Positions 34,353 to 62,730 of a stretch of DNA of 64,000 bases are shown in pieces; within the stretch, counting starts at the first letter, position 1, and every line of letters starts with the position of its first letter. Source of the stretch: Octopus sinensis (Eukaryota). A program made the position numbers and the translations under genes. The notes under the pieces are model-generated. The model did no database searches. It saw only the letters and a list, made by a program, of their open reading frames with translations, and was not told the DNA's origin. Location of the stretch: the NCBI RefSeq assembly GCF_006345805.1, contig NC_042997.1:22816001-22880000 (forward strand), given 5' to 3'.

Positions 34353-34575
34353 AAAAAAAAAAAAAAATAAATAAAATAAAATAATAATAATAAAAATATA
34401 TATATATATATATTTAAAATTTATAAGTTTAAATTATTTAAATAAATTTTTAAATTTTAACTTTAATTTAAATATTTTAATTTGGAATTTTATATTTTAT
34501 ATTTATATTTTTTAATTAATTTTTTTCTATGTATTGGCTTATGATTTTCACTGTTTGATTTGCCTAATAGTGGTT

Positions 34576-34634
<59 letters not shown>

Positions 34635-43600: not shown

Positions 43601-46600
43601 TGGCATCCATGCTAGTAGAGCACTAAGAGCACCATCTGAGCATGATCATTGCCAGAGTGGCTAACTGGCTTCCATGCCTGTGGCACATAAAAAGCACCAT
43701 TTGAGTGTGATTGTTACCAGCTTCGCCTTACTGGCACTTGTGCCGGTGGCACCTGAAAAACTTTCGAGTGAGGTCGTTGCCAGTGCCACTGGACTGGCTC
43801 CTGTGCAGGTGGGACATAAAAAAAACACCATTTGAGCGTGGTCATTGCCAGTACCGCCTGACTGACCCTCGTGCCAGTGGCACATAAAAGCATCCACTAC
43901 ACTCACAGAGTTGCTGGCGTTCTGGCACTCAAGCCCTGTGCTAGTAGGGTATTAAGAGCACCATCTGAATGTGATCGTTGCCAGAGCGGCTATCTGGCCG
44001 CCGTGCTGGTGGCACGTAAAAGACACCATTCGAGCGTGATCGTTGCCAGCATCGTCTTACTGGCACCTGTGCCAGTGGCATGTGTAAAAGATTCAAGCGA
44101 GGTCGTTGCCAGTACCGCCTGACTGGCCCCATGCCGGTGGCACGCAAGAGCACCCACTACACTCTTGGAGTGCTTGGCGTTAGGAAAGGCATCCAGCTGT
44201 AGAAACTCTGCCAGATCAAGATTGAAGCCTGGTGCAGCCATCTGGTTCGCCAGCCCTCAGTCATTCGTCCAATGCTAGCATGGAAAGCAGACGTTAAATG
44301 ATGATGATGATGATCTATCCTATGTTTTGATTATTTTCATCAGGTGTCATATTACTGGATATATACAAAGTACAAGCCTGAGTTTGAACTTGGAAATTTC
44401 ATTTTCTAGTTCACATCCAGTCTGGTACTATATACGTATCCAGGAAAACGACACCCAATGGTGATCAGAGATCAGGCCAATTAAAGATAGGTATCATTCA
44501 TCATCATCGTTTTATGTCTGCTTTTCTAAGTTCTTATTCAAAGTTACTACTCTGCTAGATATGTAGGGGACCATGCCTTGCGAATAAGTTACATTTTTGG
44601 CATGGTTTCAATTGATGGATGCCCTTCTTATTGCCAACCACTCTACCGAATGTAGTGCATGGATTTTATCATAGCACCAGCACTAGAGAGGTTATCTTGA
44701 CCCCAGCAAGTTTAAAGTCTTTTTACCCTATATTATCTCTGTTCATAATGTAGATGTAAATATTTTTAAAATATCTCATTTCTAGAATGAGATTAATAGT
44801 CCCAAGAATGTATAATCGTTTAACAACTCAGATATTTAGACATCTAATTACATGCATAACTGTTGGGAGTTTTGGTGCATGGAACTCTTTAAAAAATTGT
44901 CGCAAATTTGTTGTACTGTTTCAACGTAAGATCTGATACGTATTTCTTTCATGTTTTTATAGTCAAGAATATTGTTACATTTCACGCAATGAAGAAGAGT
45001 TGTATGGTATTTCAAAGAATATTTGTTTGAGGTCATCGATTGTCGGGAGCATTTTCTTCATACGGTTGTTTGAAAAAATCTGTTATGTTGCTAATCTCAA
45101 GGGTGCTTTGTTAATGGCTTGGGACACAGAATTGTTTCATGTTATCCAGTTGTGTTATTTGTCACTGCTAGAAAGGGGTATTGAGAAAGCTGGAAGTGTA
45201 TATTTACAAGCTATCCAGATGTGAGCTTAAGATGTTTTTGGTTCTAATTTTTTAAAAGAATCCAAAATAAAGTTTTCAAAATCAATTGTAGAACAAACAG
45301 TTAATGTTGTTTCTTAGAAATATATGTATAGCCCTGTTTGTAGATTAAGTGATAAAGCCTTAACATTTTGATCATTGGTATGACTCTCTATGTTCTCATC
45401 ACATATTTATGTTTCATCATTTTTATTGATCACATTTTCTTCTAAAGCCAGTAATGTGGAGCAGTTTCCTTGCAAGACTAATAATGACTGTATTTTCACC
45501 CCAAAATCCTGATATGTAGTAGCTCTAAAGCAACCTATCATGGTCTGCCAGCATACTCTCTTTTACTCTTTTACTTGTTTCAGTCATGTGACTGTGGCCA
45601 TGCTAGAGCACCACCTTTAGTCGATCAAATCGACCCCAGGACTTATTCTTTGTAAGCCTAGTACTTATTTTATCGGTCTCTTTTTGCCGAACCGCTAAGT
45701 TACGAGGACATAAACACACCAGCATTGGTTGTCAAGCGATGTTGGGGGGACAAACACAGACACACAAACACGCACATATACATATATATGACAGGCTTCT
45801 TTCAGTTTCCGTCTACCAAATCCACTCACAAGGCTTTGGTCGGCCCGAGGCTATAGTAGAAGACACTTACCCAAGGTGCCACGCAGTGGGACTGAACCCG
45901 GAACCATGTTTTTTTTTTTACTCCTTTTTGCAAAAAATGTTAGATTTTTCTGTATGTAAATTTTGAGATATCTTCTTTCAACTTCAGCTTGTTTACAACA
46001 TTAGCTTCACTTAATATTTTGGTTCTCTATTTATATACCACTACTATTATCATTCTCATCCAATGTATTCTGACTTAGTACTTACTGTAAAGCAGTTTAT
46101 CTGGTTAATTGCTTGAGTATCTGCTAGTGTATCTCAGAAATTATTCAAGCTAGCAAATACAAATATTTTATTAATGATTTCTTAGCTGGCTAGCTACATG
46201 CATACATACATAATTTTTTTAATATTGCCTTAACAAGTTATTTAAATATTGATTTATGAAATAGGCAGCACATAGCCTCAAACATTTGGGTGAGAGATAT
46301 AGTAAATTATATTGTCCCTCTTCTCCTTCACTATGTGTCTGGTATTTATGTTACCAACCCCAGAAGAATGAAAGGCAAAATTTAACTGGATGGAATGTGA
46401 ACTTAGAACAAGAAAATAATTCTGTCAATGCTGCTTTTTGGTTACTTAAATTTGAAATGGACAACCCTGCTCTATTCATCTTGCCTGCTGTGGGTCATAT
46501 GAAAAATGCAATCAAGTATGCTTAAACTATAAGGCTACACAAATAGTATTGTTAAATGTAAAATGCATGCAATGAAATGGTTTCTCCCATAGCATACATA

Positions 46601-49600
46601 AAACATGGAGTTGATGCTTAAATTTTGAGTTTTATGTAACTGATTTTTGTTTCATTTTTGCAACAACCTGAAATGATTGAGTTGAAATAATTCTCATAAT
46701 TTATATATGTTGGGTGATATGTAGGTAATGATAAAAATTATATCAGTTGCATACAGAGGTGCAGTGCACAACAATTTCTTTCAAATACTGCTGTCTGTAA
46801 TAGATATGATGTATGTAGAAAAATATTTCCTTTCATTTTCATTTTTTAACATTTAGTTATAGATCTGATTAATACTGGTTCATTTCTTTTCTTTTAAAAA
46901 AAAATTCATAATAAAACCTTCATCAGTTTCTTCACTGATTTCTGTGTTAAAGATGAGATGTGACAGATCTAAGATGTAGCTCAGAAGGGAGAGAGAAATA
47001 ACTGAAGGCATTGAAAGAGGGTTGTCCATGGAAAATAGGTGGGAAGGGATAAGAATTAGGGATGGATGTTAATAAAATGTGGTTTCAGTGGGGGAGTTTT
47101 GAAATATGTGCCAATTCTATCCTCAAATGATTACAGCAGCTGAGAAGTACTATAGTTAGAAGAGTGTTGGAAAAATGAAATGTGGCCAATGCTTGATGGG
47201 GGCAGATTGGGCACATGTCCCAACATATACAAACATAAACATAATGGTTTTAGGATATCACTTTCACTGTGACAGATGGGTTTTATCAAGCATAGCAAAT
47301 CACCTATCGTCTCTTTTGTGAGGCTCAACTACTTTGTTCTATAGTACGAATGCAATAGAAAGGGTTTATGAACTCTAGAATACTGTATTATGATTGTAAA
47401 ATTAGTGTCTATACTTCTGAATTATGCTAGTTTTTATATGATGGGCAGTCACACATAGTGTTATGTGATATGCAACATCTAAAGCCTGACTCAGATTTAA
47501 AATGTTTTTTTTTTTACTTTCTGTTACGCTTCACAAAAATGTGTATTACGATTTTGTGACCAAATTTTCTTTTTTTGCAGATGGATGCCTTTAATCGACA
47601 CTTTGATGCTCAGATTTATTCCTATGGGAAACAAGTGCTTATCAATTTGGTATGACACTATGGAATCAATTTAATCTTGATATTAACCACACCTAACTAA
47701 ATGAATAATATATACTAAGTGATAAGGTATTGTTGTTAATAGTATAATTTTGTTATTAGATAAATTAATGTTTATAATTTAATTAAATAGTTCGAAAACA
47801 ACCAAATTGAACAAGGATTTTCTTCTAATTTGAAGAGACTGATTGCAATGTAGATATGATAGAGAACTTTTCAGATGTCAGCCAGGTTGATTGATCAAGG
47901 AAAAATATGACATTTTAGAGGTTCTGGTTTGATATTAATTATGATGTAGCAAGTTATAATAAACCTTTATCAGCAATTCCCCATATTCATGATTTTGCAG
48001 CTTCATTGTGTGGTTGCAATATCTTTTCAAAGATAGATTTAATTAGAGCATACAATCAAATTCCTGTTGAAGAGAGTGATATACCAAAAACAGCAATTAC
48101 AACTCCATTTGGGTTGTATGAATTCCTTCATATGCCTTTTGGATTGAAGAAAGCAGCAAATACTTTCCAGAGATTCATCGACGAACTAACAAGAGATTTA
48201 CCTTTTGTACTTGCTTATATAGACGATATTCTCATTGCTAGTCCATCAAAAGAAGTTCATGAAAATCACTTAAAACTAATTTTCGAAAGACTGACTAAAA
48301 ATGGTATAGTGATATATCCATCAGTGTGTTTTCAGTGAATGCACTGTATCTTTTTTAGGTCGTCTCATTGATAGAGATGGAATTCGTCCACTGCCTGACA
48401 ACAAAGTTGAAGCTATTAACAAATTTCCAGTACCAAATTCTTTACGAAAGCTTCGAGAATTTTTAGGACTCATTAATTTTTACAGATGAATCATTCCACA
48501 TTGCATTCCTTTAACTGAATTATTAAAGAATAGGAAAAAGAAAAATGAAGCTATAACTTTAAAAGATAAAGAATTACAGGCTTTTCATTGCATAAAAGAA
48601 AAACTTTGTGAAGCAACACTCTTAAACCATCTGGTTCCTGAAGCAGAATTATTGTTGGTAGTTGATGCTTCCAATGTTGGAATTGGTGGAGCTTTACAAC
48701 AATTTCATTGTGGTTCTTGGCAACTATTATCCTTCTTTCCAAAAAAATTCAAGGCACCAGAAACAACATACAGCGTTTACGCAGCCTGAGTTAAGATTTA
48801 TGAATGGTAATAAATACTTATGATTAAGAATAGAATTCAGAATCACGTTGTGGTCACCAATTTATAATGGTTGATTGATCGCCTAGTTTATAACAGGCGT
48901 TAGTATTAAGAAGAAATGATGAGTGGAAATTTATCTATAACACTTAGATGATTTTATCTATTTATCATGTGTTCAACTTGAAATTATAATAAATGTAAAT
49001 ATTTCTTGAGTAGGAATCTATGGTGATAAAGCTGTCACTTATAACTTAATTATAATTTCCTGAGTAGAATTCGGAATCCACATTGGTTTGTCACAAATTT
49101 ATAACGGTTTTGACTTGGAAGAGATAATAAATATAATTATTTCTTGAGTAGGAAATTATGGTGATAAATCCGTCACTTATAACTTAATTATAAGTATCTA
49201 TCACCATGCATAAATCCTAGCTCAGACTACATAACTGCTGTGGTGAGTTACACACACCAAGACACTGAATGTGCATGCATGTTGAAGATAATAAAGCTCA
49301 CTCTTTTTCACAGCTATAATAACAATTTCATAGTTACAGAAATACATTTCATCAACAGGTTGAAGAAAATGAAGAAAAAGAAATTATTTACTAAATTAGT
49401 TTATTTACGTACATTTAATATTTACAGTACATTTTTATAAGTCAAAAGAAGACTGTCATAGAGAGTTACGACATAAAATTTATATTAACTAATTCTTCCA
49501 TAAGTAAGCTACATGAGTTTTTAAAAGATAAAAGTGAGTGTCGTGGAATCGAATGACAACCGATGAACACTGATTAATTTCCCAAAAATCAGGATTTTTA

Positions 49601-52600
49601 TAACTGCTCATACCTGAATTCTAAGACCTGTATTTCATAAAGATTTCTCTTTGATGCAAGTTAGAATTCAAATATGGGCAGTAATTTTAACCAATGGGAA
49701 ACTAACAATTATACCTATTTGGCCAACATGACCATGACGTCATATTACTACTGATAAAGGTTTATTATAAGTTGCTACAATGGAAATAGGAGATTAATTA
49801 TACTCTTGGGAGAGAAAAATCCATATTAGCCCTGATCATGCACACCTATGGTCGAAAGTATTCCTGCTTTAACCTGCTCATCTTTTCCTTGGGACAGTGG
49901 CCTCAAGACCATTAAATCCACTTTGTCATTTTTTTTAATGCAGTGTGAGGAAGATTTACCGGCTATGTATGGCAGGTCAAGCAACAGTAGGAACTTCCTC
50001 ATCAGTTTTATAATAGAGAAGTTGATTTGTAATATGACTAATGCCTGGGTTATTTATACAAAATATGACAGCCATTGTTTTCACAGCAATCAATATTCTG
50101 AAAGAAAAACACCTTTGAAAGAAAGCAGGAGATTTCAATGATTATGTTAAGAAATGTATGTATGAAGTGTAAAACCATTGTATCTGTAATGCAGAAGACA
50201 CAAGATTCCTCATGTGAACATAATCTTCTGTAACATTAATTTCAGGAAGGTTATAAGCTAATTGTTTTCATATGATACGGGGAAGACTGCTAGATAAATT
50301 AGGATTGTCCTAGATCAAAAACAAAATAAAATTATTACCACCATTGCTCTTTGTGAAGAACTGAGCTTTACAATAAATTTTGTTATAGAAGATGAAGAAT
50401 GACTTTGTAATGATCAAGTGACATGCATTATGAGCAAGTGGTTAATCTGTTTTGTGAGAAAGCAAACTTATAAAGGAAAGGTGGGTGCTTCTGTTGAATA
50501 ACCTATTATGGATGAAGCCAATTGAGCTAACCAATAGTGAAGAATACATTAGTGGAACACTAACTATTAAAAATTACTGGTAAATGTATAAGAATTGGAA
50601 GAAGAGAGTAAATTAAAAGTAGAGTAGGATTTAGCCAATATTCAAAGATTTGGGGACAAGGGACATGATATGTTTCAATTTATAAGATACCATGTGGAAA
50701 TTTGAGAGGATCAATGATAAAGAAAGCATTCATTTTGTTACAAATAAATGGATGAGAAACTGTGCATGCTTTGATAAGCTATGTAGTGACCACAAAGAGG
50801 AGAACACTTGTAAGGCAACAGAACAGGCAGAAAGATAATGACTTTTCTATTACAGTTTGGTAATTGGATAAATGCCAATCATAAGAAGTTAAGAGTATAC
50901 AGAGGGTTATTTTTAGAAAATATTTTGGCATCTTGGGAATTTTTTTTTTACATTTCCTGATTAGATTGGAATAGAGAAATCTGTTATGCTAGGTAATTTT
51001 TTGTGGTAGATGAGAGAAAATATGTTGGATATACAACACTAATTTTGAATAAAGTTTGATCTTTGGTTAATTAAACACAATTAGCTTAAAGGCTGTGATT
51101 GACATTTGTAAGATAATCAACAGATTAATGATAAAAATGGTTAATGTATGTATCATGAAAAGTGTTGTGGGTTAATTGTAGAAGATACATGCATTTAAGA
51201 TCAGTAAAGTCATGAGAAAAATGGCTACATCAGTCTGTATATACAGACCTGGGACACCTGGGAAGGTAATCTAATGCATACTAGCAAATACAGCTAGGTA
51301 ATGTCTATATAAAAGTCTCTTGATAAGATTTTAAAGTGATCCAGAAGTGCTGAGTGATCCTAGTGGAGGGAATCTTAAAAAAAAGAAAATGGAAAAAGTA
51401 ATGAGGTCTGATTTCAGATTAGTGAAACTCACAAAAGAGATGATGCTGGGCCACAAGAGGCAAGATGCTTTTCTAGAGAAGATTTGTCCAGCCGATTCAA
51501 TTGTGGATAAAACAGATGTATGTAGTGACAGTGCAGTGTCTATTGTTGTTTAAACTACAATGGGAAATTATCAAATTAGTTCTTCTGTTCAGGTGGATTG
51601 TTAATTCAGATATCCTGCAATGCTAATATTTTCTTTCTTCAACTCTAGAAAAATTATCCTAAATATTACATTTCCTTATGATAACTTAATAAGAACAAAA
51701 ACTTTATGAAATGATAAAATATATAATAAAGATTTAATCACATGTATGTATTTTAAGATCTCATGATTAATATTTATCCAAATATTAATTGATCAGATTC
51801 TCATTGTTGTGCATATTAGTAATAATTACTGTAGAATAAAGTTACTATAGCTTTTTATCTTAGCTTACTCCTTTAGAGAAACACAGCCAACATGTAAAAT
51901 GTGATATTTATCTAATGTAATCTTTTCAATATTTTAGATTGATCATAAAAAACCTGAGGGTTACTTGGAAAAGGCCTTTGCACAGATGATAGTAAATGCT
52001 GCAAACAAAGATATCAGGTTGTAAAATTACATCTCTTCCAAACTAAAATAACTGAATATTTAAGACATTTTGTCATTTTCTTTTACACTTTGATATCGAA
52101 GAACATAAAGTAGATAATGCTTATCATAAAACTGAATGAAGTTTATTCATGCTATAAGACAATTGGTAGGCTTGTGTTATTTTCTGGTTGCTACCTAGAC
52201 CATCATGTAGCTTTTGTATTCATGAACATTTCACAGTTACTATTGTTGTATTCCCTATCAATGTTCAACTTTACAACATCAAATATCCTTTCAAGGTAAC
52301 TACACATTCTTCACTTGGTTGGATTTTGTCTTCAGAGACAAAAAATACTTCAGCCTTGAACATCAGATTATCCTATACAAAGCATAATATATGCTAGATT
52401 AGAATATTGCTGTACATTTGGGATAATATATCCTCCAAACACACTGTAGATTACAACCCCTCAAAAATTTAGAGATAATCAAGCTTTAACTCCTCATATT
52501 TCATAATCCACTATTAAGATGTGCCCTTCCTCTTATTTTTCTAATGTCCTTAAAACCATTTCTACTCCTCTCCACCTAGTGACTGAAACATATGATACAC

Positions 52601-55600
52601 CCATTTGTGCTGCTCCTGTCTCCACCACCTCCACTGTGTTTTGTCCTTCTCAGAATTTCATCTTTTAAATTGAAAATTCCTCACACTAATCTCATTCAGT
52701 TATGCTTACACCTCAGTCTAGAATGGCATAAAAAGGCTATGGGCGCTACCCCTTTTCCTCAGAACAATTAATAAAAAAGGTAAATGAACATACTTATTTC
52801 TTTTCATGTGACACAAGAGTCTTTTTGTAAGGAGAGAGTGTGAGGCAATAGAATTAACTTTAGTCTCTTATAGGTATCTATATTATCAAGTCTAAAGAGA
52901 GTGCACTGAACATGTATGTGGCTCTCTACTGCCTGTGCTGTCTCCTCCGTAATATACATGAACATACTAGTTTTTCCAATTTCATATTTGTAAATAAATT
53001 TTGTTTCAGTTTCTAGTGTAAGATTTTAAGAGTACGTTATGAACTAAAAAGCTGGTTCTCAATATTGATTATCAGTCTTTCTAGGCTTCGATAAATAAAG
53101 CCATTTTGAATTAGTATCTAACACCTACGCTTTTCAAATATGTTGAGTTTGTGGTAACCACTAAGCATTCATCAGCTAATTCTGTGTTACATTGAGAGCT
53201 AATGATGGTTAACCCAAAGCCCTTTTCACTTGCAAGAGAAGCATTAGATCAAGATTTTAAAATTACATTTTTTTTTGTATTTTTAACCAGATGGAATTAG
53301 TTTGTACCTGTAACATTCAAAGGCTCTCCAACACTGGTGAAATAGTTGCAGTTTGTGTTCAGCTTGAACAGCTGTAGGTCAACAACTGTAAAAAAACATG
53401 GCAGAAAAAAAATTTCAGAGAGTTGACTTTCTGGGAATAAAGGATTGGGTATAATGGTTAGTGTGTGTCTGAGGAGACAGTATAAGTGTGTTGCGTGGTC
53501 TCGGGTGAAGGAAGCATGCAGCTAGCTAATTCTGAGAAGCAATGATAGGAAAAGCAGTAGTATTCTCTTTTTTGCTTCTTAAATGGCTTGGTGGAGGCAG
53601 GCCAGTGTCATGATTCTTTGCAGAGCTTCCATTACTTCAAAATTAGGTCTGGATGAGGAAAAAATTTAAACAGTTAGAAAGCGACTGGCTGATCTATATA
53701 TGAGTTCAGAAGTTTAAACAGAGAACAGATTAGTTTGGGGCAAAAATGGGAATGGCTATTGGCCAGATGATAGTGTAGAAATAATGCAAGAAAATAAATG
53801 AGATTCTTGTACTCTGTAACATTGTTCAGCTTACTGTATGAAGTACCTGCATTACAAAGAATAGTTTTGATAGGCACACCTCATTACAAAATATTTAGTT
53901 TTCAAGCTTTACTCGCAAGAAAATCATCAATAGAGCTATGCACAGTATATATGTTCTCATTTTTTCCTTATTACTGCTGCATATTCTGGCCAGGAGGGTT
54001 TAATCCTGCTTGATTCTAACTGCAGTATTTTTTTATATCTCAGCAGCTAAAACTACTACATTTGTTATCCACCTTACTTCCAATTCCACACTGTACATGT
54101 AGCAAACATCCTCCTTTTGAGCTTCCTTTTAATTATCATCACCTGCTAAACAACTGCTTCTGACAACATGCATATCCATCACCTTGTAAAACTACTTGTA
54201 CCATATTTTCTATCCTCAGTCATCATCATCATTTAACGTCTGCTTTCCATGCTTGCATGGGTTGGATGGTTTGATCAAGGACTGGTGAGCCAGAAGGCTG
54301 CACCAGGTGCAATCTGATCTGGCAATGTTTCTACAGCTGGATGCCCTTCCTAATGCAAACCACTCCGAGAGTGTAGTATAACTTCTACATCATCATCATC
54401 ATCATCGTTTAACATCCGCTTTCCATGCTAGCATGGGTTGGACGATTTGACTGTGGACTGGCAAATAAATTACCGATACCTTAAAAGTATTTTATTTCAA
54501 TGGGTCACTGTATTACAGAAAATATTCATGAATTTTAGTTAATATTATCTCTAGTAGACAGGTGCAAACTCCTTGACTTTGTATACAGTAACTTCATGAA
54601 TGGTGAAAAGGAATCAGCCAGACCAGTTTCAATCTTAGACACATATAGACAATATTTTATTTCATATATTATCCTCAAACATACTAGGATGCCATCTATG
54701 CAAATAGATATTGGATAACGAATTAAAAAAAAAAAAAAAAGAAACTAATAGCAGCTCCTACCAAGTCTACAAACATACACACACATGCACACCGTACACC
54801 TAGCACACTTTACAAGATTTCTGCTCACTCATGTAATGAATCTCTATGGAGTATCTTGGTTATTACATGTGGATAGAATAGCCCATCATGGAGATGGGCT
54901 GTACTATCTTGTGTATAAACAGGTGGTTCTAAAGGCTGCCACTCTATAATAACTCAACCCTTCTATATGTTCCCTCCCAAAATACATTAATCACCAAGCA
55001 GCCATGCATCAGCCAACCTCATTTACCCCTATGAACAAAGCTACCATACAATCCCCCCCTCTCTCTCTCAATAGCTTAAAGAGAAACTTTCATGATCACT
55101 TCAGCTTGACAAAGTGACTGCTTTCAACAGTATTCCTGCTGTTGTCTTCAAATACTGTACACATGTTGACTTCATTCAACTGTATGTTACACTCCCTAAC
55201 ATGTCTTTTCTTTAGCTACATTTTCTACTCTTCTGAATTAACAATCTGTAGGTGATAAGACTTTCCTCATTTTATCAGCTTTACTGCCAGACCCTATACT
55301 GCATGCTTTCCCTAATTTTTCCTTCTCAGAATTATCATCCTCTGGAATGTTCTCTCTCAGCTTAAAGTTTTCCAACTGACAGCAAATTGTATGAGTTCAA
55401 GCTGAACATCAGCTGCCAACTTCACCAGTGTGGGAGAAGCTACAAGTATTATGGGATCTACCTTTTCCCTTATGCTAAATAGTAACATTCTTCCACCATA
55501 CATACACACCTCTACACATATATACTTATAATTTCATATGTAGCAGCACAAAATATTGTAAATTAATTTTGCAGATGAGGATTTATATACACATTTTAAA

Positions 55601-58600
55601 GTAAAGATTTTATTAACTTTTGCAGGTATGAAGCATTTGATTTTCATCATGAATGTCGAAATATGCGATGGGAGAGGCTTTCAATTCTAATAGATTTGAT
55701 ACGTGAAGAAAGAAAAGAATTAGGGTGAGTATTTCTTTTATCTCTCATCAGTGTAATATAATTTCAATTTTTATTGTGTTGTTATACTCTTTTACTCTTT
55801 ACTCTTTTACTTGTTTCAGTCATTTGACTGCGGCCATGCTGGAGCACCGCCTTTAGTCGAGCAAATCAACCCCGGGACTTATTCTTTGTAAGCCCAGTAC
55901 TTATTCTATCGGTCTCTTTTGCCGAACCGCTAAGTGACGGGGACGTAAACACGCCAGCATCGGTTGTCAAGCAATGCTAGGGGGACAGACACACAAACAC
56001 ACACACATACAAATACACATATATATATATATATACATATATACGACAGGCTTCTTTCAGTTTCTGTCTACCAAATCCACTCACAAGGCATTGGTCGGCC
56101 TGGGGCTATAGCAGAAAACACTTGCCCAAGATGCCATGCAATGGGACTGAACCCGGAACCATGTGGTTGGTTAGCAAGCTACTTACCACACAGCCACTCC
56201 TGCGCCTGTACACCTGTTATGATTGTACACTTAAAATTTTTTTTGTGCCACATTTCTCCTCTAACTGTATAAGAGTGCTTATCGCCATCATCATCATTTA
56301 ACATCCTCCTTCCATGCTGACATGGGTTAGATGGTTTAACAAGACCTGGCCAGGCAGGAACCTGTGCCATACTTCTGAATGTGTTTTGGCATGGTGTTTA
56401 CAGCTGGATGCCCATCCTAACACCAACCACTCTGTAGAATGGGCTGAGTGCTTTTTATGTAGCATGTCAGTTTTGGCATGATTTTATAGTTGGATGCCTT
56501 TCTAAATGCCTATCACTACCTTACAGTGTGGACTGGGTGCTTTTTAAGTGGCACCTGTACTGGCTTTGCAAGATAAAGAGTCTTTGAGAGGGGAGGGAGC
56601 ATTGGAGGAGGTGATCTTGTGTCAGATGATGAAAGATTAGAATGTGAGAGAGAGGCAGAAACAGATATCTTGCTGTAGAGGAGGTCCATGGTTACCCAGC
56701 CAGAGAGAGGGAGAGAAAGAGACCAAGAGTTAACAAGAATAAGGGTAGAAACAGGTTTGTTGCTGTAGAGGAGATACATGATTACTCAGCCAGAGGGAAA
56801 GTGAGGGATGGCAGCAAGTGCCAGGGTATACTTGCGAGGAATGGGGATCAGGGCATAGATGGAATGGTAGAGTAAGGAAGAGGGAGATGAATTGTGGCAG
56901 GTGCTGGCAGGGTATTGCTAAGGAGTCGGGAGTGGGAGAATGCAGTGACTGGAAAGAATCTGGGTATATAGAGGGGGAGGAGACAGGAGGAAGTGGTGAT
57001 GCAGTGAGCAGGGTAGTGAGGACTGAGTTGGGGGTGGGGACTACTATGACTGGTGAGAATCTAGGTATGTAGAGGGTGGTTGCACCGATACAGTGAGCAG
57101 GGTAGCAAGGACTGGATTGGGGAGTAAGAGATAATCATAGTGTGTGAAGAGGAAATGTGAGGAAGAGAAGAGAAACACTTTGGGATGGGAAGGAGGGTGG
57201 ATTAGGGCAGAGTGAAAATTGCAAATTTCAAAATTGGTAACCAAGAATCGATATTTTTATTCTTTTATAGGTTTCAAATGACAATTTATAAAATGTTTAT
57301 CACTCAACATTTGTTTTATTCTTTTAATGTATAATGGAGAAACTTATATATTTATAGATTTTTCTCTTCATCGCGAGATGGCATTACCTTAACACAGCAG
57401 AATGGTGTCTTTCGGACAAACTGCATTGATTGCCTAGATCGTACCAATGTTGTACAAAGTATGTTAGCCAAAGAGTCATTACAAGATCAGTTAATTGTAA
57501 GTATGCAAATTTCATTCATTTTGTCTTTAAGCAAGTATACAAATGTCTTCAATTTTCTTAAAAACATTTCATCCATGTTGAAGAATGATTACAAAGATTT
57601 TATCTCTTTTTAGGAAATGTGATACTTGTTCACATGACAAATATGGTGTTAATTATAATCATCTTCAAACATCAATTGATATCAGTCTACACAGTTAACG
57701 CAGTTGGTGTTACAACCCAATGTGTTATGCTGTACAGTTAATTGACCTGGATTTTATTCTTTTATATCTTCCTATAATCAACAACTTATTACATGAACTG
57801 GGTGTGTTGTGCCACCATCACTAAGAGAGATTATAATCATGATAAACCACAAGTCTTTTAAAACTAAACACTTCGTCCTCCATGTATCACTTGTAATTTA
57901 GAGTGGCTTGTGGATCCATTTTTCTCCTCTACATGAGTGTTTTTTTGTTTTTTTTTACATAACCAATGCCATTAATGGACTACTTTGACTACAGGACCAA
58001 AAACAATGATGTAGGTTGTTACCTGAATAAAAGGAGGGAAAGGAGGCTTGCATAGCATGAAGTTCATATCTTCATCAATGTCTTGTAACAGTAAGAATGA
58101 TTTCAGCTATCTTAGAGTACAGAAAAGTATATTAGTTTTTCAAGAGTTGAACATAATACTTCACTGCCTCTCTGTGAGAACACATCCCTTTCTAGTAGGA
58201 TTTTGGCTTTACAAAAAGCATATTGTTTTGTAATTCTGTATGTGAGAAACCTGATTAGTTCCTAATGTATATATCTATGATACAAAAATGAGAATTTAAT
58301 TCACAAAATGTCTTTACTACAGTGAGCATCTTTTCTGATTTGACTTTCGATGTTGGGGTAGTTTTCACTCTTTAATGGAAATGAAGCAGCCTTTCATTGC
58401 AATTATTCAAATTATTGTATAATAATAATGAAATTATTATATATTGTGTTGCATTTAAGAAAAAATTGTATCAAAAACATTTCTTTCTTTGTTACAGCAT
58501 GTTGATATTAAAGATAAAAATCATGCAAATTTTTGCACCCTCTGCACATGCATATGAAAGAGAGAGATGACACAAATACAGTGTACTTATGAATCAATAT

Positions 58601-60743
58601 GTGTACATAATCATATATGCTGACACCTTAGGCAAATATCTACTACTCTCACTCTAGATCAACCTTGCCTTGTGAGGGGAATTTGTTGACAGAAACTGTA
58701 TAGAAGCCTGTTATGTCTTTGTATGTGTGTGTATTTGAGTGTAATTGGTTGACAAAAACTGTATAGAAGTCTGGTGTGTGTGTGTGTGTGTTAAAATAAT
58801 AATAATGAAATTATTGTATATAGTGCTCAGGTGCACTACAACATGTCAAAAGTGCATGTAAAGCATATGCAGTGATGTACAAATGTCTGGAAAGTGAACA
58901 GTGTATGAGTCAGATATATGCTTGCATGTGTATGGAGGGGAGAAAATCGGGTGTAGTGTTGGCAAATCTCAGGAAACATGGAAGTTTTGAAGGATGCAGT
59001 GCTCCGACAACTAACAAATGATGCCGGCAGTTTGTTCCATACTTCAGCAACTCTCAGCGTGAAAAAATGTTTCCGAAAGTCATGGGAGCTGTGCTATTTT
59101 CTGACTTTGTAAACATGTCCATGGGTGTTAGACAGGTGGAGTTTGAAAAGGTGCTCAGAGTTATTGTTTGTAAGATGGTTAATAATTTAATGTAGACATT
59201 CCACAGTTTTGCTGTCACCATGTGAGTGAAAAAGTGATATGATGTTTACATTCTTAGTTCACATTACTACTGAATACTCTGAACTTTCTAAGACTCATGA
59301 AATAAAAAAAATATCAAAATTAGTCCTCATCCAACCCATCCAAGCATGGAGCATACATATTACTCTTTTATATATATTTACATTTGTGCACACAGACACA
59401 CACACAAACATACTTGTATATATTACTTCTTTATACATGTTTACTTGCATGCATACACATACAAACACACATATGCACACGTACATGGGAGTAAATTTAA
59501 TTTGTAAAATTTATCACTTTTAGCTTGTAGTATATTTTTTTTCCTCTGCTATTTTCTTTTACATTTTATGCACTTTATATTTGTAGTATCTTCAGGTTTT
59601 ACCCCCAGGAAAAGATGTAATGGATTCTCAAAACTTTTCATACATCTTTAAAAATGGTAAGTAGATTTTATAATTAAATTTCTTGTATTTTGGATGAACA
59701 TTTTCTTAGAGATAATATAGTTTTAAAAATTTCATGTAATTGCTCGTATATATTTGCTGACAGAGGCAAATTGGCTGAGTTCCTTTCAAGTGTTGGGCCT
59801 CACGGAGGCGAGGTGGCTAAGTTCCTTTTGAATGGGCCTCACAGAGGTGAGGTGGCTGAGTTCCTTTTGAATGGATCTCACAGAGGTGAGGTGGCTGAGT
59901 TCCTTTCGAATGGGCCTCGCAGAGTTGAGGTGGCTGAGATCCTTTCATGCAAAGTGGCTGAGCATATTTCGAATGTTGAGCTTCACAGAGGCAATGACCA
60001 AGACCTTTGACATTATGTCGTACTTGAGAAGATCCATCAAGCCAAGCAAAATTGGAGTCATGACAGATACTGGTGTCACACAAATGGCATCTGTGCCAGT
60101 GGCATGTAAAAGCACCCATTACATTCTCAGAATGGTTGGCATTAGGAAGGGCACCCAGCCATAGAAAACCATGTCAAATCAGACTGGAGCTTGGCACAGC
60201 CTTCCAGCGTGCCAGCCCAGTCAGACTGTCTAACCCATACCAGCATGGACAATGGATGTTAAATGATGATGATGACCTTTTGAATGAGAAGTGCATATTA
60301 ATTAAGTTTTGGTATAATTTCTTATTTTAGTGTGGGCTGACAATGCAGATATTTTATCAAAGCAGTATGCTAGCACAGGTGCATTAAAAACAGACTTTAC
60401 TCGGTATGTAAAATTCAGTTCATCTATTATCCAAACTAACTATTCCTTAATATGTTCACTATAAATATTTTTAATACACTTACCACATTCATTACTCACA
60501 CTTGATTTCTATAGACTAAGTATGATGACATGACCAACTATCTTTCTAAGTTTTCTTTTACCATCTGCTTATCCAAACTCCTGATCAATACTTTCTATTT
60601 TATTTACACTGATCTTATTGTGATTTATTTTATATTTTATTATTACAAGGACTGGTAAACGAACTAAATCTGGCTTAATGATGGATGGTTTAAATTCACT
60701 AATCCGTTATTTCAAGAACAATTTTAAAGATGGATTCCGACAG
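9924..60743 (+). CDS. SACM1L: Phosphatidylinositol-4-phosphate phosphatase SAC1, 15 coding exons, 3'-partial (490 codons)
   Basis: join(9924-9949,22280-22377,34044-34118,35922-36049,37605-37754,38765-38858,40348-40535,41408-41494,47581-47649,51938-52017,55626-55724,57358-57496,59587-59656,60331-60403,60650-60743) = 1470 nt, open throughout, all junctions GT-AG. Sac-domain motifs [40 protein letters not shown] (CX5RT, Cys387), [12 protein letters not shown]. The exons encoding the transmembrane C-terminus were not found in the window. Confidence 0.96.
11597..11845 (+). mobile_element. Young RTE LINE 3' end fragment
   Basis: CGTGCCGGTGGCACGTAAAAATCACC...GCTAGCAAGGAAAACGGACGTTAAAC(GAT)n with CpGs retained. 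Confidence 0.9.
12150..13440 (+). mobile_element. Highly decayed LINE ORF2 remnant (CR1/L2-like)
   Basis: [17 protein letters not shown] resembles the NYRPISLTS.ISKVME RT motif; otherwise scrambled. Boundaries approximate. Confidence 0.4.
13462..14381 (+). mobile_element. Internally deleted mariner transposon (second family)
   Basis: TA-flanked TIRs (TGAGGTGGTATCAAAAGGTTCCCAGACTAGTT vs CATTGTGGAATCAAAAAGTTCCCAGACTAGTT). N-terminal remnant [19 protein letters not shown]; C-terminal WILHDA...[14 protein letters not shown]...[10 protein letters not shown]. Confidence 0.92.
14664..16590 (+). mobile_element. 5'-truncated decayed RTE LINE with long pyrimidine-rich 3' UTR
   Basis: [10 protein letters not shown]..., [28 protein letters not shown]; then a CT-rich tract (about 15600-16300) and the common RTE terminus. 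Confidence 0.9.
17520..17923 (+). mobile_element. Full-length tRNA-derived SINE with CORE-like segment and internal (TA)n(TG)n
   Basis: Head GGCGCAGGAGTGGCTGTGTGGTAAG...GGTTCAGTCCC, central CTTGGGCAAGTG, tail GAAACAAGTAAAAGAG. Near-identical minus-strand copies at 45555-45908 and 55785-56206. Confidence 0.92.
18680..18902 (+). mobile_element. RTE LINE 3' end fragment
   Basis: AAAAGCACC...AAGGGCATC...GCCAGCATGGAAAACAGAC...(GAT)n. Confidence 0.8.
19696..21123 (+). mobile_element. Decayed, internally deleted RTE LINE
   Basis: [44 protein letters not shown]; 3' UTR tandem units and (GAT)n tail. Confidence 0.9.
21170..21418 (+). mobile_element. Non-autonomous Helitron-like 3' end
   Basis: Subterminal CCCAGGCAATGCCAGG (decayed CCGGGCAACGCCGGG hairpin) followed by CTAG|T at 21415-21419. 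Confidence 0.55.
21765..22125 (+). mobile_element. Diverged copy of the CORE-like SINE
   Basis: TTTGAGCAAGTATGTTTTACTATAGCC...TAACTTAGCAGTTTGGCAAAAG...AAAACAAGTAAAAG. Confidence 0.7.
22280..22377 (+). CDS. SACM1L: SAC1 exon 2
   Basis: ctag|G CAT ATC...CAA G|gtgag; [32 protein letters not shown]. Confidence 0.93.
23120..23397 (+). mobile_element. RTE LINE 3' end fragment
   Basis: Duplicated AAAAGCAC...GTGGTTGGT core and TTAAATGATGATG end. Confidence 0.75.
23487..23714 (+). mobile_element. tRNA-derived SINE (second family)
   Basis: Near reverse complement of 6548-6780. Confidence 0.9.
24410..25502. mobile_element. TTAA-flanked foldback MITE (piggyBac-like) with ~190-bp inverted arms
   Basis: TTAA at 24406-24409 and 25503-25506; ends (T)CGCTTGTCATCC and GGATGACAAGTGG. 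24410-24492 plus 24818-24912 is inverted-homologous to 25320-25502. The left arm is interrupted by an insert carrying an RTE 3' end (24610-24810). Confidence 0.8.
25840..26190 (+). mobile_element. Old diverged SINE copy
   Basis: GTGTGGTTAAGAAGCTTG...TTCAGTCCCATTGCATGG...CCTTGTGAGTTAATTTGGTTGACAGAA resembles the 17520 family head. Confidence 0.55.
26322..27824 (+). mobile_element. GC-rich 5'-truncated RTE-clade LINE of a second family, (CAAGTA)n tail
   Basis: [41 protein letters not shown] (YADD decayed), RWFGHAAR; in-frame stop at 27020 and frameshifts; possible 7-bp TSD TTATTTG at 26315-26321 and 27825-27831. Confidence 0.92.
27832..28980 (-). mobile_element. Old RTE LINE 3' UTR (GA-rich on +), split by the GC-rich RTE
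   Basis: TTTCTACAGTTTGATGCCCTTCCTAAT continues the minus-strand tail that begins at about 26246; followed by a purine-rich tract like the reverse complement of 15600-16300. Far boundary approximate. Confidence 0.6.
29090..29250 (-). mobile_element. Penelope-like pseudo-LTR fragment
   Basis: Contains the minus-strand GGCTCGAAACGT motif in a minimal hammerhead arrangement typical of PLE repeats; no RT or GIY-YIG sequence seen. Confidence 0.5.
29164..29201 (-). ncRNA. Degenerate minimal type I hammerhead ribozyme motif
   Basis: UCUUU-CUGUCGA-AAAGC GUAG GCUC-GAAACGUA/AAAGA: 5-bp stem I, core with A6U, short stem II with one mismatch, palindromic ACGU stem III, GUA cleavage triplet. Confidence 0.55.
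29253..29410. repeat. Compound (CA)n/(TA)n/(TG)n microsatellite
   Basis: Direct reading. Similar tracts at 22868-22892, 24170-24202, 28680-28728, 34300-34400 and 34578-34632. Confidence 0.95.
30103..30460 (+). mobile_element. Helitron-like 5' end
   Basis: A|TCTATTATATAAAATCCGTTCTATCTGTCTGTGTG, the TC start plus TATA/CTGT pattern of non-autonomous Helitrons; CpG-rich. Confidence 0.55.
30851..31200 (+). mobile_element. Young RTE LINE 3' end with three ~60-bp tandem units
   Basis: Units start at 30851, 30912 and 30972; then the common terminus and (GAT)n. Confidence 0.92.
31200..31860 (-). mobile_element. Helitron-like sequence containing an end-to-start junction
   Basis: Minus strand reads CTCGGGCAATGCTGGGTACACCTG-CTAG|TC-TTATATATTAAAAGCGAAGTTATCTGTCTGTG. 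Confidence 0.55.
31862..33810 (-). mobile_element. Decayed RTE LINE fragment
   Basis: [61 protein letters not shown] on the minus strand. Confidence 0.92.
34044..34118 (+). CDS. SACM1L: SAC1 exon 3
   Basis: cag|TT...GCA G|gtaag; [24 protein letters not shown]. Confidence 0.93.
35922..36049 (+). CDS. SACM1L: SAC1 exon 4
   Basis: cag|GA...CAG|gt; [42 protein letters not shown]. Confidence 0.94.
37185..37360 (-). mobile_element. RTE LINE 3' end fragment
   Basis: CATCATCGTTAATG...CTGGCATGGATTGGAC...TGGTTTCTAAGG-type minus-strand core. Confidence 0.7.
37605..37754 (+). CDS. SACM1L: SAC1 exon 5
   Basis: cag|ATC...AGG|gtaag; [50 protein letters not shown]. Confidence 0.95.
38765..38858 (+). CDS. 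SACM1L: SAC1 exon 6
   Basis: cag|GGT...GGA T|gtatcttt; [31 protein letters not shown]. Confidence 0.93.
38859..40347 (+). other. U12-type (minor spliceosome) GT-AG intron of SAC1
   Basis: 5' splice site GTATCTTTT (U12 consensus GTATCCTT); branch point TTTTTCCTTGAC at 40325-40336 with the branch A (40335) 12 nt from the end of the intron (CAG); no long polypyrimidine tract in between. Confidence 0.85.
39141..39386. mobile_element. hAT-like MITE inside the U12 intron
   Basis: CAGTGGTTTTCAACC at the left and GGTTTGAGAACTACTG at the right; subterminal TATGGCC/GGTCCATA-type inverted motifs. No clear 8-bp TSD. Confidence 0.7.
40348..40535 (+). CDS. SACM1L: SAC1 exon 7
   Basis: cag|TT GTA...CAG|gta; [62 protein letters not shown]. 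Confidence 0.95.
41408..41494 (+). CDS. SACM1L: SAC1 exon 8
   Basis: cag|AGT...CAC|gtatgt; [29 protein letters not shown]. Confidence 0.95.
41700..44314 (+). mobile_element. Longest RTE LINE copy: 5'-truncated ORF2 with premature stops and tandem-repeat 3' UTR
   Basis: [71 protein letters not shown]; stops for example at 42386-42388; (GAT)n tail. Confidence 0.95.
44494..44660 (-). mobile_element. Old RTE LINE 3' end fragment, tail-to-tail with the preceding copy
   Basis: CATCATCATCGTTTTATGTCTGC...GGATGCCCTTCTTATTGCCAACCACTC. Confidence 0.65.
45555..45908 (-). mobile_element. 5'-truncated CORE-like SINE
   Basis: Reverse complement of the 17520 family from the (CTTTTA)n tail to GGAACCATG. 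Confidence 0.92.
47581..47649 (+). CDS. SACM1L: SAC1 exon 9
   Basis: cag|ATG...TTG|gtatga; [23 protein letters not shown]. Confidence 0.94.
47945..49779. mobile_element. Composite element: 29-bp inverted termini enclosing the Gypsy pol fragment and an opposite-strand LTR-like sequence
   Basis: TGTAGCAAGTTATAATAAACCTTTATCAG (47945-47973) vs the reverse complement of 49751-49779: 28/29 identical. Flanks ATGA / ATGG. 48786-49779 is homologous to the LTR at 61081-61848. Confidence 0.75.
47974..48785 (+). mobile_element. Ty3/Gypsy pol fragment (RT and RNase H), disrupted
   Basis: [15 protein letters not shown]...[29 protein letters not shown]...[10 protein letters not shown]; then [12 protein letters not shown] and [16 protein letters not shown]; frameshifts and stops. 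Confidence 0.93.
51938..52017 (+). CDS. SACM1L: SAC1 exon 10
   Basis: tag|ATT...AG|gtt; [27 protein letters not shown]. Confidence 0.9.
53290..53670 (-). mobile_element. Decayed CR1-group (L2-like) LINE 3' end
   Basis: Minus strand resembles the FYRYY...HPY...LWN.LP C-terminal pattern; similar plus-strand pieces at about 55250-55450 and 63360-63670. Confidence 0.45.
54220..54470 (-). mobile_element. Two adjacent RTE LINE 3' end fragments
   Basis: Two (CAT)n-TTTAAC.TC.GCTTTCCATGCT.GCATGGGTTGGA starts at about 54220 and 54388. Confidence 0.85.
55626..55724 (+). CDS. SACM1L: SAC1 exon 11
   Basis: cag|G TAT...GG|gtgagt; [33 protein letters not shown]. Confidence 0.95.
55785..56206 (-). mobile_element. 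Full-length CORE-like SINE
   Basis: Near-exact reverse complement of 17520-17923. Confidence 0.93.
56285..57240 (-). mobile_element. RTE LINE 3' UTR, long purine-rich form
   Basis: (CAT)n start, duplicated core, then a GA-rich tract homologous to 62200-62730 and to the reverse complement of 16100-16300. Confidence 0.75.
57358..57496 (+). CDS. SACM1L: SAC1 exon 12 (catalytic P-loop)
   Basis: tag|A TTT...ATT|gtaagt; [46 protein letters not shown]. Confidence 0.96.
58795..59222 (-). mobile_element. CR1 LINE 3' end
   Basis: Minus strand translates [44 protein letters not shown], the CR1 ORF2 C-terminal pattern; (TTA)n tail. Confidence 0.8.
59587..59656 (+). CDS. SACM1L: SAC1 exon 13
   Basis: tag|TAT...AAT G|gtaag; [23 protein letters not shown]. 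Confidence 0.85.
59773..59990 (+). repeat. 39-bp minisatellite, about 5 units, fused to an RTE 3' end (to 60275)
   Basis: GGCTGAGTTCCTTTTGAATGGGCCTCACAGAGGTGAGGT units at 59773, 59815, 59854, 59893 and a partial unit at 59932. Confidence 0.9.
60331..60403 (+). CDS. SACM1L: SAC1 exon 14
   Basis: tag|TG TGG...CG|gtatgt; [24 protein letters not shown]. Confidence 0.95.
60650..60743 (+). CDS. SACM1L: SAC1 exon 15
   Basis: aag|G ACT...CAG|gtaatt; [31 protein letters not shown]. Confidence 0.94.
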
Positions 60744-61897: not shown

Positions 61898-62119
61898 TAA
61901 AACTGTTCTCCTGAAAAGTGTGTGTATTTGGGTTTGTGCATGTGTAAATATATAACTACACAAAACTGTTGGTGATTTCTTTTCTTTCTTTGGACTTTTC
62001 CCTTTCTCCATTCCAACAAAGAGTAATGCTCAAAACATCAAAAACTCTCTCTCTCTTTTTACTGAGCTTCAAACTAATACATTCCTTGTGCATGACCTTT
62101 TGTTGTCTGTTACTCTTAT

Positions 62120-62730
62120 TTGACATGGTTTCTACAGCTGGATGCCTTTCCTAATGCCAGCCACTTTACAGAGTGTACTCAGTGCTTTTTATGTGGCACC
62201 AGTACCAGTAAGTTCACCAAAGTAACTTGCAAGAGAAGGCACCTCACCCACTCAACTGAGTGAGGAGTAGTATTGAGGGAGATGGCTTTGTGTCAGGTGA
62301 GGAGAAGTTTGAGTATGATAGAGGGATATAAACAGGTGTCTTGCAGTAGAGGAGATACATGGCTGCTCCGGTTGAAAAAGGAAAAGAGAGCGCACAAGAG
62401 AAAGAAAAGTGGTGAAGTTGATGTATTGGGGTGCATACTCAAGTTACAGGGATGGGTGTATAAATAAAGTGGTGAAGAGGATTGGATAGAGTAAGTGGGT
62501 AGGTAAGTTTGCAAGAGTGTGAAAGGAGAGTTGGAGAGAAAGAGGAGGGTGTGCAGTGAATGAAGATGAATGGAGGGAGCCAGGTAAGAAGGTGAACTGC
62601 AGGGGAGAGAGACTCACTAGGAACAAATTGTGTGCAGGTAAATTCATGAGAGTTTGAAAGGAAGAGTGGTAGATAGAGGAGAGGGGATGCAGTTAGTGAT
62701 GAATATGGATGGAGGTCAGCTAATGGGACT
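62120..62730 (-). mobile_element. RTE LINE 3' UTR, long purine-rich form
   Basis: GGTTTCTACAGCTGGATGCC core followed by a GA-rich tract homologous to 56570-56800. Confidence 0.7.

What the first reader, a model, noticed from the sequence alone, without database searches (positions are those of the whole stretch)
60082..60385. Candidate restorative A-to-I recoding site in SAC1 (Ser449 to Gly) guided by an intronic LINE tail
Seen: exon 14 reads [13 protein letters not shown], with Ser encoded AGC (A at 60372) in a U-A-G context. About 270 nt upstream, in the preceding intron, the RTE-tail repeat GCATCTGTGCCAGTG (60087-60101) is antiparallel-complementary to exon bases 60368-60382. It gives 10 contiguous pairs (one G-U), an A-C mismatch exactly at A60372 opposite C60097, then 4 more pairs (two G-U); 3 further pairs form past a 1-nt bulge. 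Established: this position is Gly in human ([11 protein letters not shown]) and yeast ([11 protein letters not shown]) Sac1; ADARs prefer UAG and A-C mismatches; coleoid cephalopods recode mRNA extensively; AGC edited reads as GGC (Gly). Inference: a G-to-A genomic substitution may be tolerated because a transposon supplies the editing-complementary sequence. Caveat: the duplex is short and the repeat is very abundant, so the match could be chance.
Basis: partly seen in the sequence, partly recalled or inferred. Interest (0 to 1): 0.72.

Follow-up and report, generated by a model that had tools for sequence, protein, structure and literature searches.

The report
Octopus SAC1 Gly-to-Ser change, editing unproven
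Octopus SAC1 carries a genomic serine where about 280 other eukaryotes, including argonaut and cuttlefish, have glycine, and RNA editing could turn it back into glycine; whether that happens was not tested, and the proposed guide sequence in the intron is no better than a roughly 1-in-25 chance match.

Summary
The sequence observation holds. A60372 starts an AGC (Ser449) codon in a UAG context in coding exon 14 of SAC1. The intronic 15-mer 60087-60101 pairs with 60368-60382 exactly as described.

The evolutionary premise also holds. Ser449 is encoded in O. vulgaris/sinensis (this window) and O. bimaculoides. Argonauta has GGG, cuttlefish has GGA, and 282 other homologues have Gly.

The LINE tail sits at the same place in O. 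bimaculoides, and none was found in Argonauta intron 13. Its one difference in the 15-mer turns a G-U into a G-C.

The proposed mechanism is unproven and leans unlikely:
- Shuffled flanks reach the duplex energy in 4% of trials.
- 2-5% of other exonic A's in the gene have an equally long match.
- The 15-mer is no more conserved than neutral intron.
- The A:C register is the least favoured in folding.
- Inverted LINE tails and a local intron-exon hairpin compete for the same bases.
- Only 2-3% of such potential restorative sites are edited in octopus, mostly below 20%.
- Octopus SAC1 has four other departures from conserved residues that editing cannot repair.

No octopus RNA data could be reached. 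The most likely reading is a tolerated lineage-specific substitution. One RNA-seq pile-up would settle it.

The parts
60372..60374 (+). AGC codon for Ser449 of SAC1. A60372 is the candidate editing site, in a T-A-G context.
   Evidence: The codon is GGG in Argonauta and GGA in Sepia.
60331..60403 (+). SAC1 coding exon 14, encoding (V)[23 protein letters not shown](R).
   Evidence: AG/GT borders and reading frame. It is 73/73 identical to O. bimaculoides.
60087..60106 (+). Intronic segment complementary to exon 14. The extension to 60106 gives the 10 bp + 3-nt bulge + 7 bp register.
   Evidence: O. bimaculoides has C in place of T60090.
60085..60275 (+). LINE 3' tail ending in a GATGAT run. It has about 20 further copies in the window, on both strands.
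   Evidence: blastn of the element against the window. The same tail follows an RT-bearing element at 41951-44310. It is orthologous in O. bimaculoides at 93.1% identity.
59657..60330 (+). SAC1 intron 13 (674 nt). It holds a 39-bp tandem array at 59772-59946 and the LINE tail.
60293..60370 (+). Predicted local hairpin. The 3' end of intron 13 (60293-60331) pairs with the 5' half of exon 14 (60336-60370). It competes with the 5' arm of the proposed duplex.
   Evidence: Pair probabilities of 0.7-0.96 in the O. bimaculoides fold. In the O. vulgaris context an exon-internal hairpin places A60372 opposite G60334.
56286..56455 (-). Inverted LINE tail in intron 11. It is a potential long dsRNA partner of 60085-60275.
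   Evidence: blastn at 75.6% over 172 nt. RNAduplex gives -201 kcal/mol with 146 pairs.
54219..54463 (-). Inverted LINE tail copies in intron 10.
   Evidence: RNAduplex gives -216 kcal/mol.
62114..62189 (-). Partial inverted LINE tail downstream of exon 15.
   Evidence: RNAduplex gives -118 kcal/mol.
9924..60743 (+). SAC1 (SACM1L orthologue), coding exons 1-15 of about 20. The window model is identical to residues 10-490 of the O. vulgaris/O. sinensis protein. The catalytic CIDCLDRT motif starts at 57422.

Best explanation
Ser449 is a real, genomically fixed Gly-to-Ser substitution. It arose on the branch leading to Octopus, after the split from Argonauta and before the O. vulgaris/O. bimaculoides split. 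By the published definition it is a potential restorative editing site. Most likely it is unedited, or edited only at the low levels typical of coleoid sites, and the enzyme works with Ser, at least outside the nervous system. The complementarity between the LINE tail and exon 14 is real and shared with O. bimaculoides, but it is best read as a fortuitous match. Shown: the substitution, its phylogenetic distribution, the shared insertion, the duplex and its statistics. Inferred: that Ser is tolerated, and that editing is absent or low.
For: - Ser449 is encoded in three octopus assemblies. Gly is present in Argonauta, Sepia and 282 other homologues.
- Base rates from Jiang & Zhang 2019 (PMC6881472): 3.44% (octopus) and 2.26% (bimac) of potential restorative sites are edited. 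Of the edited ones, 89.8% are below 20% and 0.88% are at 80-100%. In non-neural tissues the edited fraction is 0.03-0.2%. SAC1 is a housekeeping enzyme, so the unedited form must work in most tissues (inference).
- Octopus SAC1 departs from residues that are at least 95% conserved at 7 of 163 columns. Four of these (T74S, A160G, F204I, T254S) cannot be repaired by A-to-I.
- Arg163-to-Gln is CAA in all cephalopods and reads CAA in eight RNA-derived cuttlefish contigs.
- The duplex is not exceptional. Shuffled flanks reach its energy in 4.1% of trials. Of other exonic A's, 1.9-4.8% do as well by pair count. Windows in exons 4 and 6 reach -24.2 and -24.1 kcal/mol against -24.9 here.
- The 15-mer is 14/15 conserved against 93.1% for the whole tail and about 93-94% for the neighbouring intron. 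Exon 14's identity is shared by 7 of 14 exons.
- In the exon 13-15 context, the 10-bp helix has a probability of about 0 in O. vulgaris but 0.98 in O. bimaculoides. The A:C register is disfavoured in both.
- Inverted LINE tails offer partners at -118 to -216 kcal/mol.
Against: - The position is invariant from yeast to human, so a free Gly-to-Ser change is surprising.
- The change is exactly the G-to-A type that editing can undo, and it sits in the preferred UAG triplet.
- Three of the seven departures from conserved residues are A-to-G restorable, against about one expected. This excess is weak and not significant.
- The window around A60372 has the most stable flank duplex of all 478 exonic A windows in the gene.
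- The strict ungapped A:C criterion is met in only 0.1-0.4% of shuffles.
- In O. bimaculoides the 10-bp helix is predicted at 0.98 in every context tried up to 1157 nt, and its one sequence difference strengthens the pairing.
- No octopus RNA data were available, so editing is untested rather than excluded.
Confidence: 0.6

Rival explanations
1. A60372 is deaminated at a substantial level in pre-mRNA, restoring Gly449, and the LINE-tail segment 60087-60101(-60106) is the editing-complementary sequence. On this model the insertion permitted, or later compensated, the G-to-A substitution.
For: - The duplex is verified and is the best flank duplex in the gene by energy.
- The insertion and the Ser share the same phylogenetic distribution: both are present in the two Octopus species, and Argonauta has Gly and no detectable tail in intron 13.
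- The only difference between species in the 15-mer keeps the pairing, G-U against G-C.
- The 10-bp helix is predicted at 0.98 or more in O. bimaculoides and 0.87-1.0 in short O. vulgaris contexts.
- The site has a UAG context and replaces an invariant ancestral Gly.
Against: - There is no RNA evidence.
- Only 10 stable pairs form, all 3' of the site. The four pairs 5' of the A have a probability of 0.07 or less, and the A:C register costs +3.5 to +6.2 kcal/mol.
- The helix vanishes in O. vulgaris contexts of 550 nt or more.
- The 15-mer shows no conservation beyond the neutral rate.
- The energy p-value is about 0.04.
- Inverted LINE tails can sequester the segment.
- The apparently compensatory exon changes at 60374 and 60377 are an ascertainment effect of starting from a present-day match.
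- Base rates are low.
- The order of insertion and substitution cannot be resolved, because both fall on the same branch.
Confidence: 0.06
2. A60372 is edited at a detectable, probably low to moderate, level, but the LINE-tail 15-mer is not the guide. The double-stranded context would come from the local hairpin between the 3' end of intron 13 and exon 14, from exon-only structure, or from ADAR recruited by long duplexes between inverted LINE tails in neighbouring introns.
For: - Exon 14 is predicted to be almost fully paired with intron 13. Positions 60336-60370 pair with 60293-60331 at 0.7-0.96.
- The last 55 nt of the intron are 98% conserved, against about 93% elsewhere.
- Inverted tails lie 1.9 to about 6 kb away, with duplex energies of -118 to -216 kcal/mol.
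- The UAG triplet is favoured.
- Several percent of coleoid coding A's are edited.
Against: - In the O. vulgaris fold A60372 faces G60334, a mismatch that ADARs disfavour (established knowledge).
- In the O. bimaculoides fold it sits unpaired at a helix junction.
- The overall fold of 60000-60410 is not more stable than shuffles, with z = -1.43.
- High conservation of the intron's 3' end is expected from splicing signals alone.
- There is no RNA evidence.
Confidence: 0.2

Closest known systems
Potential and actual restorative (harm-permitting) A-to-I sites in coleoids (Jiang & Zhang 2019, PMC6881472)
   Same: A derived genomic A replaces an ancestral G, and editing would give back the ancestral amino acid. 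The octopus lineage and the same logic apply. Thousands of such sites are catalogued: 2,818 in octopus and 1,960 in bimac.
   Different: Here editing itself is not shown. The gene is a housekeeping enzyme rather than a neural-specific one. No SAC1 site appears in the portion of their source data that is held, though that file was cut when stored.
Recoding sites guided by an intronic editing-complementary sequence (mammalian GluA2 Q/R and R/G sites; Drosophila Syt1, reviewed in PMC5705066)
   Same: An exonic A is proposed to pair with a nearby intronic segment before splicing.
   Different: Those complementary sequences form longer, phylogenetically conserved duplexes, with conservation above the intron background. 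Here there are 10 stable pairs, neutral-rate conservation, and a predicted structure that depends on context.
[quoted passage not shown]
   Same: The same codon logic applies: an AGY Ser is edited to GGY Gly.
   Different: That site is experimentally established and diversifying or regulatory. It is not a restoration of an invariant residue, and it is not repeat-guided.
Inverted-repeat transposon dsRNA as ADAR substrate (primate Alu pairs; editing inducer elements)
   Same: Inverted LINE tails in adjacent SAC1 introns could form duplexes of 95-166 pairs.
   Different: Such duplexes normally give promiscuous non-coding editing. A role in directing a single coding site here is speculation.

Membership tests
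Restorative A-to-I editing site (sensu Jiang & Zhang 2019) | The coding A is derived from an ancestral G, and an A-to-G change is nonsynonymous. | tested here: met
   The codon is AGC in Octopus, GGG in Argonauta and GGA in Sepia. Gly is present in 282 other homologues.
Restorative A-to-I editing site (sensu Jiang & Zhang 2019) | The post-editing amino acid equals an ancestral state. | tested here: met
   IGC reads as GGC, which is Gly, the state in all outgroups.
Restorative A-to-I editing site (sensu Jiang & Zhang 2019) | The site is actually edited: A in the genome and an A/G mixture in RNA. | not testable with these tools
   No octopus RNA-derived SAC1 sequence exists in the collections. 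Cluster 1 holds only four genome-derived proteins. No paper or held supplement lists it.
ADAR site with intronic editing-complementary sequence | A stable duplex encloses the edited A. | tested here: inconclusive
   The 10-bp helix lies 3' of the A. Its probability is 0.98 in O. bimaculoides and about 0 in O. vulgaris contexts of 550 nt or more. The 5' arm has a probability of 0.07 or less.
ADAR site with intronic editing-complementary sequence | The complementary sequence is conserved above the intron background in species that share the site. | tested here: not met
   The 15-mer is 14/15 identical, against 93.1% for the tail and 93-94% for the flanking intron. The one change does keep the pairing.
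ADAR site with intronic editing-complementary sequence | Editing depends on the complementary sequence. | not testable with these tools
   This needs a minigene experiment.
SAC1 / Sac-domain phosphoinositide phosphatase | A Syja_N (Sac) domain with the CX5R(T/S) catalytic motif, and orthology to SAC1. | tested here: met
   CIDCLDRT starts at 57422. PF02383 is recorded on the orthologues, and the model is identical to residues 10-490 of the O. vulgaris/O. sinensis protein named SAC1 or SAC1-like. PDB matches are 3LWT and 4TU3.
   59968-60045 and 60085-60275 match 43377-43461 and 44061-44310, downstream of an RVT_1 ORF at 41951-42388.
   Only Pfam RVT_1 and PHD were scored. No clade-level comparison was made.

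The most novel reading that the evidence does not exclude
A transposon-derived intronic segment, the 5' part of a LINE tail, serves as the editing-complementary sequence for high-level Ser449-to-Gly recoding of a housekeeping phosphoinositide phosphatase in Octopus. On this reading a LINE insertion allowed, or rescued, a G-to-A substitution at a residue invariant across eukaryotes. That would make it a dated, mechanistically explicit example of harm-permitting editing created by a mobile element.
Probability: 0.05. Interest if true: 0.7.

Novelty: new member of a known kind. Interest (0 to 1): 0.3.

Why it matters
If A60372 were highly edited, this would be an unusually clean single-gene case for the harm-permitting model of coleoid editing. 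It would combine a residue invariant from yeast to human, a datable substitution, and an identifiable transposon-derived guide. It would also show that octopus recoding can depend on intronic repeats rather than exon-only structure.

If the site is not edited, which is the more likely outcome, what remains is a small curiosity. Octopus SAC1 tolerates Ser at an otherwise invariant Gly, along with several other departures from conserved residues. Either way, the question can be answered directly from public RNA-seq.

Tried and rejected
- Protein searches with a 41-aa and a 182-aa query returned only fragments of similar length and no cephalopods. They served only to show that the Gly is invariant. 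A 481-aa gene model was needed to reach the orthologues.
- I looked for octopus RNA-derived SAC1 sequences, and the collections hold none. Cluster 1 contains only four genome-derived proteins. Logan transcripts exist only for cuttlefish, where the codon is GGA.
- Literature: Liscovitch-Brauer 2017 is not held. The supplements of Jiang & Zhang 2019 and Shoshan 2021 have no SAC1 entry, though the files were cut when stored. Three further full-text searches gave nothing specific.
- I considered reading the Octopus-derived exon changes at 60374 and 60377 as compensatory evolution towards the LINE tail. I rejected this. Any derived change inside a helix that was found because it pairs today must look pair-creating, and 60374 is also forced to C or T by the Ser codon.
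- I considered exon 14's 100% identity between the two octopuses as a sign of constraint. I rejected this because 7 of 14 exons are identical and overall exon divergence is 1.25%.
- I used a human SACM1L sequence recalled from memory only as a tblastn probe to locate exons. No conclusion rests on it.
- An empty insertion site in Argonauta could not be delimited. Intron 13 is too diverged, and homology only begins at 60325.

Full report
**1. What is in the sequence**

The window carries coding exons 1-15 of SAC1 (SACM1L orthologue) on the + strand.
- I mapped the exons by motif search and tblastn and fixed their borders on AG/GT sites.
- Exon 1 has its ATG at 9924.
- The resulting 481-aa model is identical to residues 10-490 of the protein annotated in both O. 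vulgaris and O. sinensis.
- The catalytic motif CIDCLDRT starts at 57422.

The exon in question is 60331-60403, the 14th coding exon. Intron 13 is 59657-60330 (674 nt).

A60372 is the first base of AGC, Ser449, with T before it and G after it.

**2. The substitution is real, derived and confined to Octopus**

- Gly occupies this position in yeast Sac1 (PDB 3LWT and 4TU3).
- It also does so in 164 of 164 short homologues and 118 of 119 full-length homologues. The single exception is O. bimaculoides.
- The 90% identity cluster holds O. bimaculoides, O. vulgaris/O. sinensis and Argonauta hians. The neighbouring cluster holds Sepia pharaonis and cuttlefish transcripts.
- At the DNA level the codon is AGC in the window and in O. 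bimaculoides, GGG in Argonauta, GGA in the Sepia genome, and GGA in eight Logan cuttlefish transcripts.

So the G-to-A change arose after the Argonauta split and before the O. vulgaris/O. bimaculoides split. By the definition of Jiang & Zhang 2019 (PMC6881472), the site is a potential restorative editing site.

**3. The repeat**

The segment 60085-60275 has about 20 relatives in the window, on both strands. The same tail, and an upstream piece matching 59968-60045, lies 3' of an element at 41951-43417 whose ORFs hit Pfam RVT_1 and PHD. 'LINE tail' is therefore justified. 'RTE' was not tested. A 39-bp tandem array (59772-59946) lies just upstream.

The tail is present at the orthologous position in O. 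bimaculoides. The alignment is contiguous at 90% over 1170 nt. No copy is detectable in Argonauta intron 13, which is about 2 kb long. The insertion and the substitution therefore fall on the same branch, and their order is unresolved.

In O. bimaculoides the 15-mer reads GCACCTGTGCCAGTG. The single difference turns the T60090:G60379 wobble into a G-C pair.

**4. Is the duplex more than chance?**

| Test | Result |
|---|---|
| Ungapped count, at least 14 pairs, any opposing base, other exonic A's (n = 478, within 1 kb) | 23 (4.8%) |
| Same, with C opposite | 9 (1.9%) |
| Same criterion with C opposite, dinucleotide shuffles of the flanks | 0.1-0.4% |
| Same, any opposing base, shuffles | 0.5-3.5% |
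| RNAduplex energy of the 23-nt window around A60372 | -24.9 kcal/mol, lowest of 478 (mean -15.2, SD 2.6) |
| Next best independent windows (exons 4 and 6) | -24.2 and -24.1 kcal/mol |
| Shuffled flanks reaching -24.9 kcal/mol | 4.1% |

It is the 10-bp helix, a 3-nt bulge (60097-60099), then 7 pairs between 60100-60106 and 60372-60366, with A60372 paired to U60100.

Because register, wobbles and bulges were all free choices, I take roughly 0.04 as the fair figure. That is suggestive, not compelling.

**5. Folding**

- For 60000-60410 the MFE lacks the helix, but the ensemble gives it a probability of 0.87. The region is not more stable than shuffles, with z = -1.43.
- In O. vulgaris contexts of 550 nt or more the helix probability falls to 0.05 or less.
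  - The intronic segment then forms its own hairpin (60085-60089 with 60094-60098).
  - Exon 14 folds on itself, placing A60372 opposite G60334.
- In O. bimaculoides the 10-bp helix holds at 0.98 or more in all contexts tried up to 1157 nt.
  - The 5' half of exon 14 pairs with the end of intron 13 (60293-60331).
  - A60372 is left unpaired at the junction of the two helices.

Cost of forcing each structure in the exon 13-15 context, relative to the unconstrained ensemble:

| Forced structure | O. vulgaris (kcal/mol) | O. bimaculoides (kcal/mol) |
|---|---|---|
| 10-bp helix | +3.5 | 0.0 |
| 10 bp + 7 bp, A-U register | +4.1 | +1.1 |
| 10 bp + 4 bp, A:C register | +6.2 | +3.5 |

The A:C geometry that motivated the finding is the least favoured in both species. 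The prediction also flips between two species that share the Ser. These differences are within the error of such models for RNAs of about 1 kb, so the folding result is inconclusive.

**6. Competing partners**

Inverted LINE tails lie in the same pre-mRNA at 54219-54463, 56286-56455 and 62114-62189. RNAduplex gives -216, -201 and -118 kcal/mol with 60080-60290, against about -25 kcal/mol for the exon duplex.

**7. Conservation**

The two octopuses differ at 18 of 1440 exonic positions (1.25%), and 7 of 14 exons are identical, including exon 14. The LINE tail is 93.1% identical, the neighbouring intron 92-94%, and the 15-mer 14/15. There is no constraint on the proposed guide beyond the neutral rate. 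Only the last 55 nt of the intron stand out, at 98%, and splicing signals alone explain that.

**8. Base rates and internal controls**

From Jiang & Zhang 2019:
- 3.44% (octopus) and 2.26% (bimac) of potential restorative sites are edited.
- Of octopus restorative sites, 89.8% are edited below 20% and 0.88% at 80-100%.
- In non-neural bimac tissues the edited fraction is 0.03-0.2%.

SAC1 is needed in all cells (established knowledge), so the Ser form must function in most tissues (inference).

Aligning 118 full-length homologues shows that octopus SAC1 departs from residues conserved at 95% or more at 7 of 163 columns: T74S, A160G, R163Q, F204I, T254S, G310K and G449S. Four of these cannot be repaired by A-to-I. 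R163Q is CAA in all cephalopods, in a column with Arg in 113 of 113 others. It reads CAA in eight independent RNA-derived cuttlefish contigs. So an invariant residue lost through a G-to-A change is not restored in the majority of those transcripts. Three restorable departures out of seven, against about one expected, is a weak, non-significant hint in the other direction.

**9. What could not be done**

No octopus RNA-derived SAC1 sequence and no editing-site table covering this gene could be reached. The central claim, an A/G mixture in RNA, therefore remains untested.

**10. Verdict**

The mechanism, editing guided by the LINE tail, is unproven, and on balance I judge it unlikely at about 0.06. 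I put detectable editing by some structure at about a quarter overall, and a plain tolerated substitution with a fortuitous complement at about 0.6. The kind of phenomenon proposed is already known, with thousands of restorative sites catalogued in octopus. Only a transposon-derived guide at an invariant residue of a housekeeping enzyme would be new.

Noticed in passing
window 38774-38776 (CAA, Gln163; middle A at 38775): All four cephalopods have Gln where 113 of 113 other homologues have Arg. CAA edited at its middle A would read Arg, so this is a second potential restorative, Q/R-type site. Eight RNA-derived cuttlefish contigs read CAA, meaning the site is not edited in the majority of transcripts there.
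   Followed up: partly
window 51950-51952 (AAA, Lys310); also Ser74 (35942-35944), Gly160, Ile204, Ser254: These are further octopod departures from residues conserved at 95% or more in SAC1. Lys310 would need two edits to give the conserved Gly. T74S, A160G, F204I and T254S cannot be repaired by A-to-I.
   Followed up: partly
window 41951-44310, + strand, inside SAC1 intron 8: A LINE remnant with broken ORFs that hit Pfam RVT_1 (41951-42388) and a PHD finger (42590-42898). It is followed by the same 3' tail as in intron 13. The clade was not determined.
   Followed up: partly
window 59772-59946: A 39-bp tandem repeat of about 4.4 copies at 86-90% match lies in intron 13, just upstream of the LINE tail. 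The orthologous O. bimaculoides region gives several overlapping blast hits, which suggests a different copy number.
   Followed up: no
window 54219-54463, 56286-56455, 62114-62189 (- strand) against 60085-60275 (+): Inverted LINE tails in neighbouring SAC1 introns could form duplexes of 95-166 pairs (-118 to -216 kcal/mol). This is the kind of long dsRNA that ADARs hyper-edit.
   Followed up: partly
window 26001-28000 and 32001-34000: There is a local G+C rise to 0.49 at 26-28 kb and a strong negative GC skew (-0.23) at 32-34 kb, inside SAC1 introns. These are probably other repeats.
   Followed up: no
L002 (Argonauta hians) 23587-25595 against window 59657-60330: Intron 13 is about 2 kb in Argonauta and 674 nt in Octopus. 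No alignable sequence exists apart from the last few bases before the exon.
   Followed up: partly
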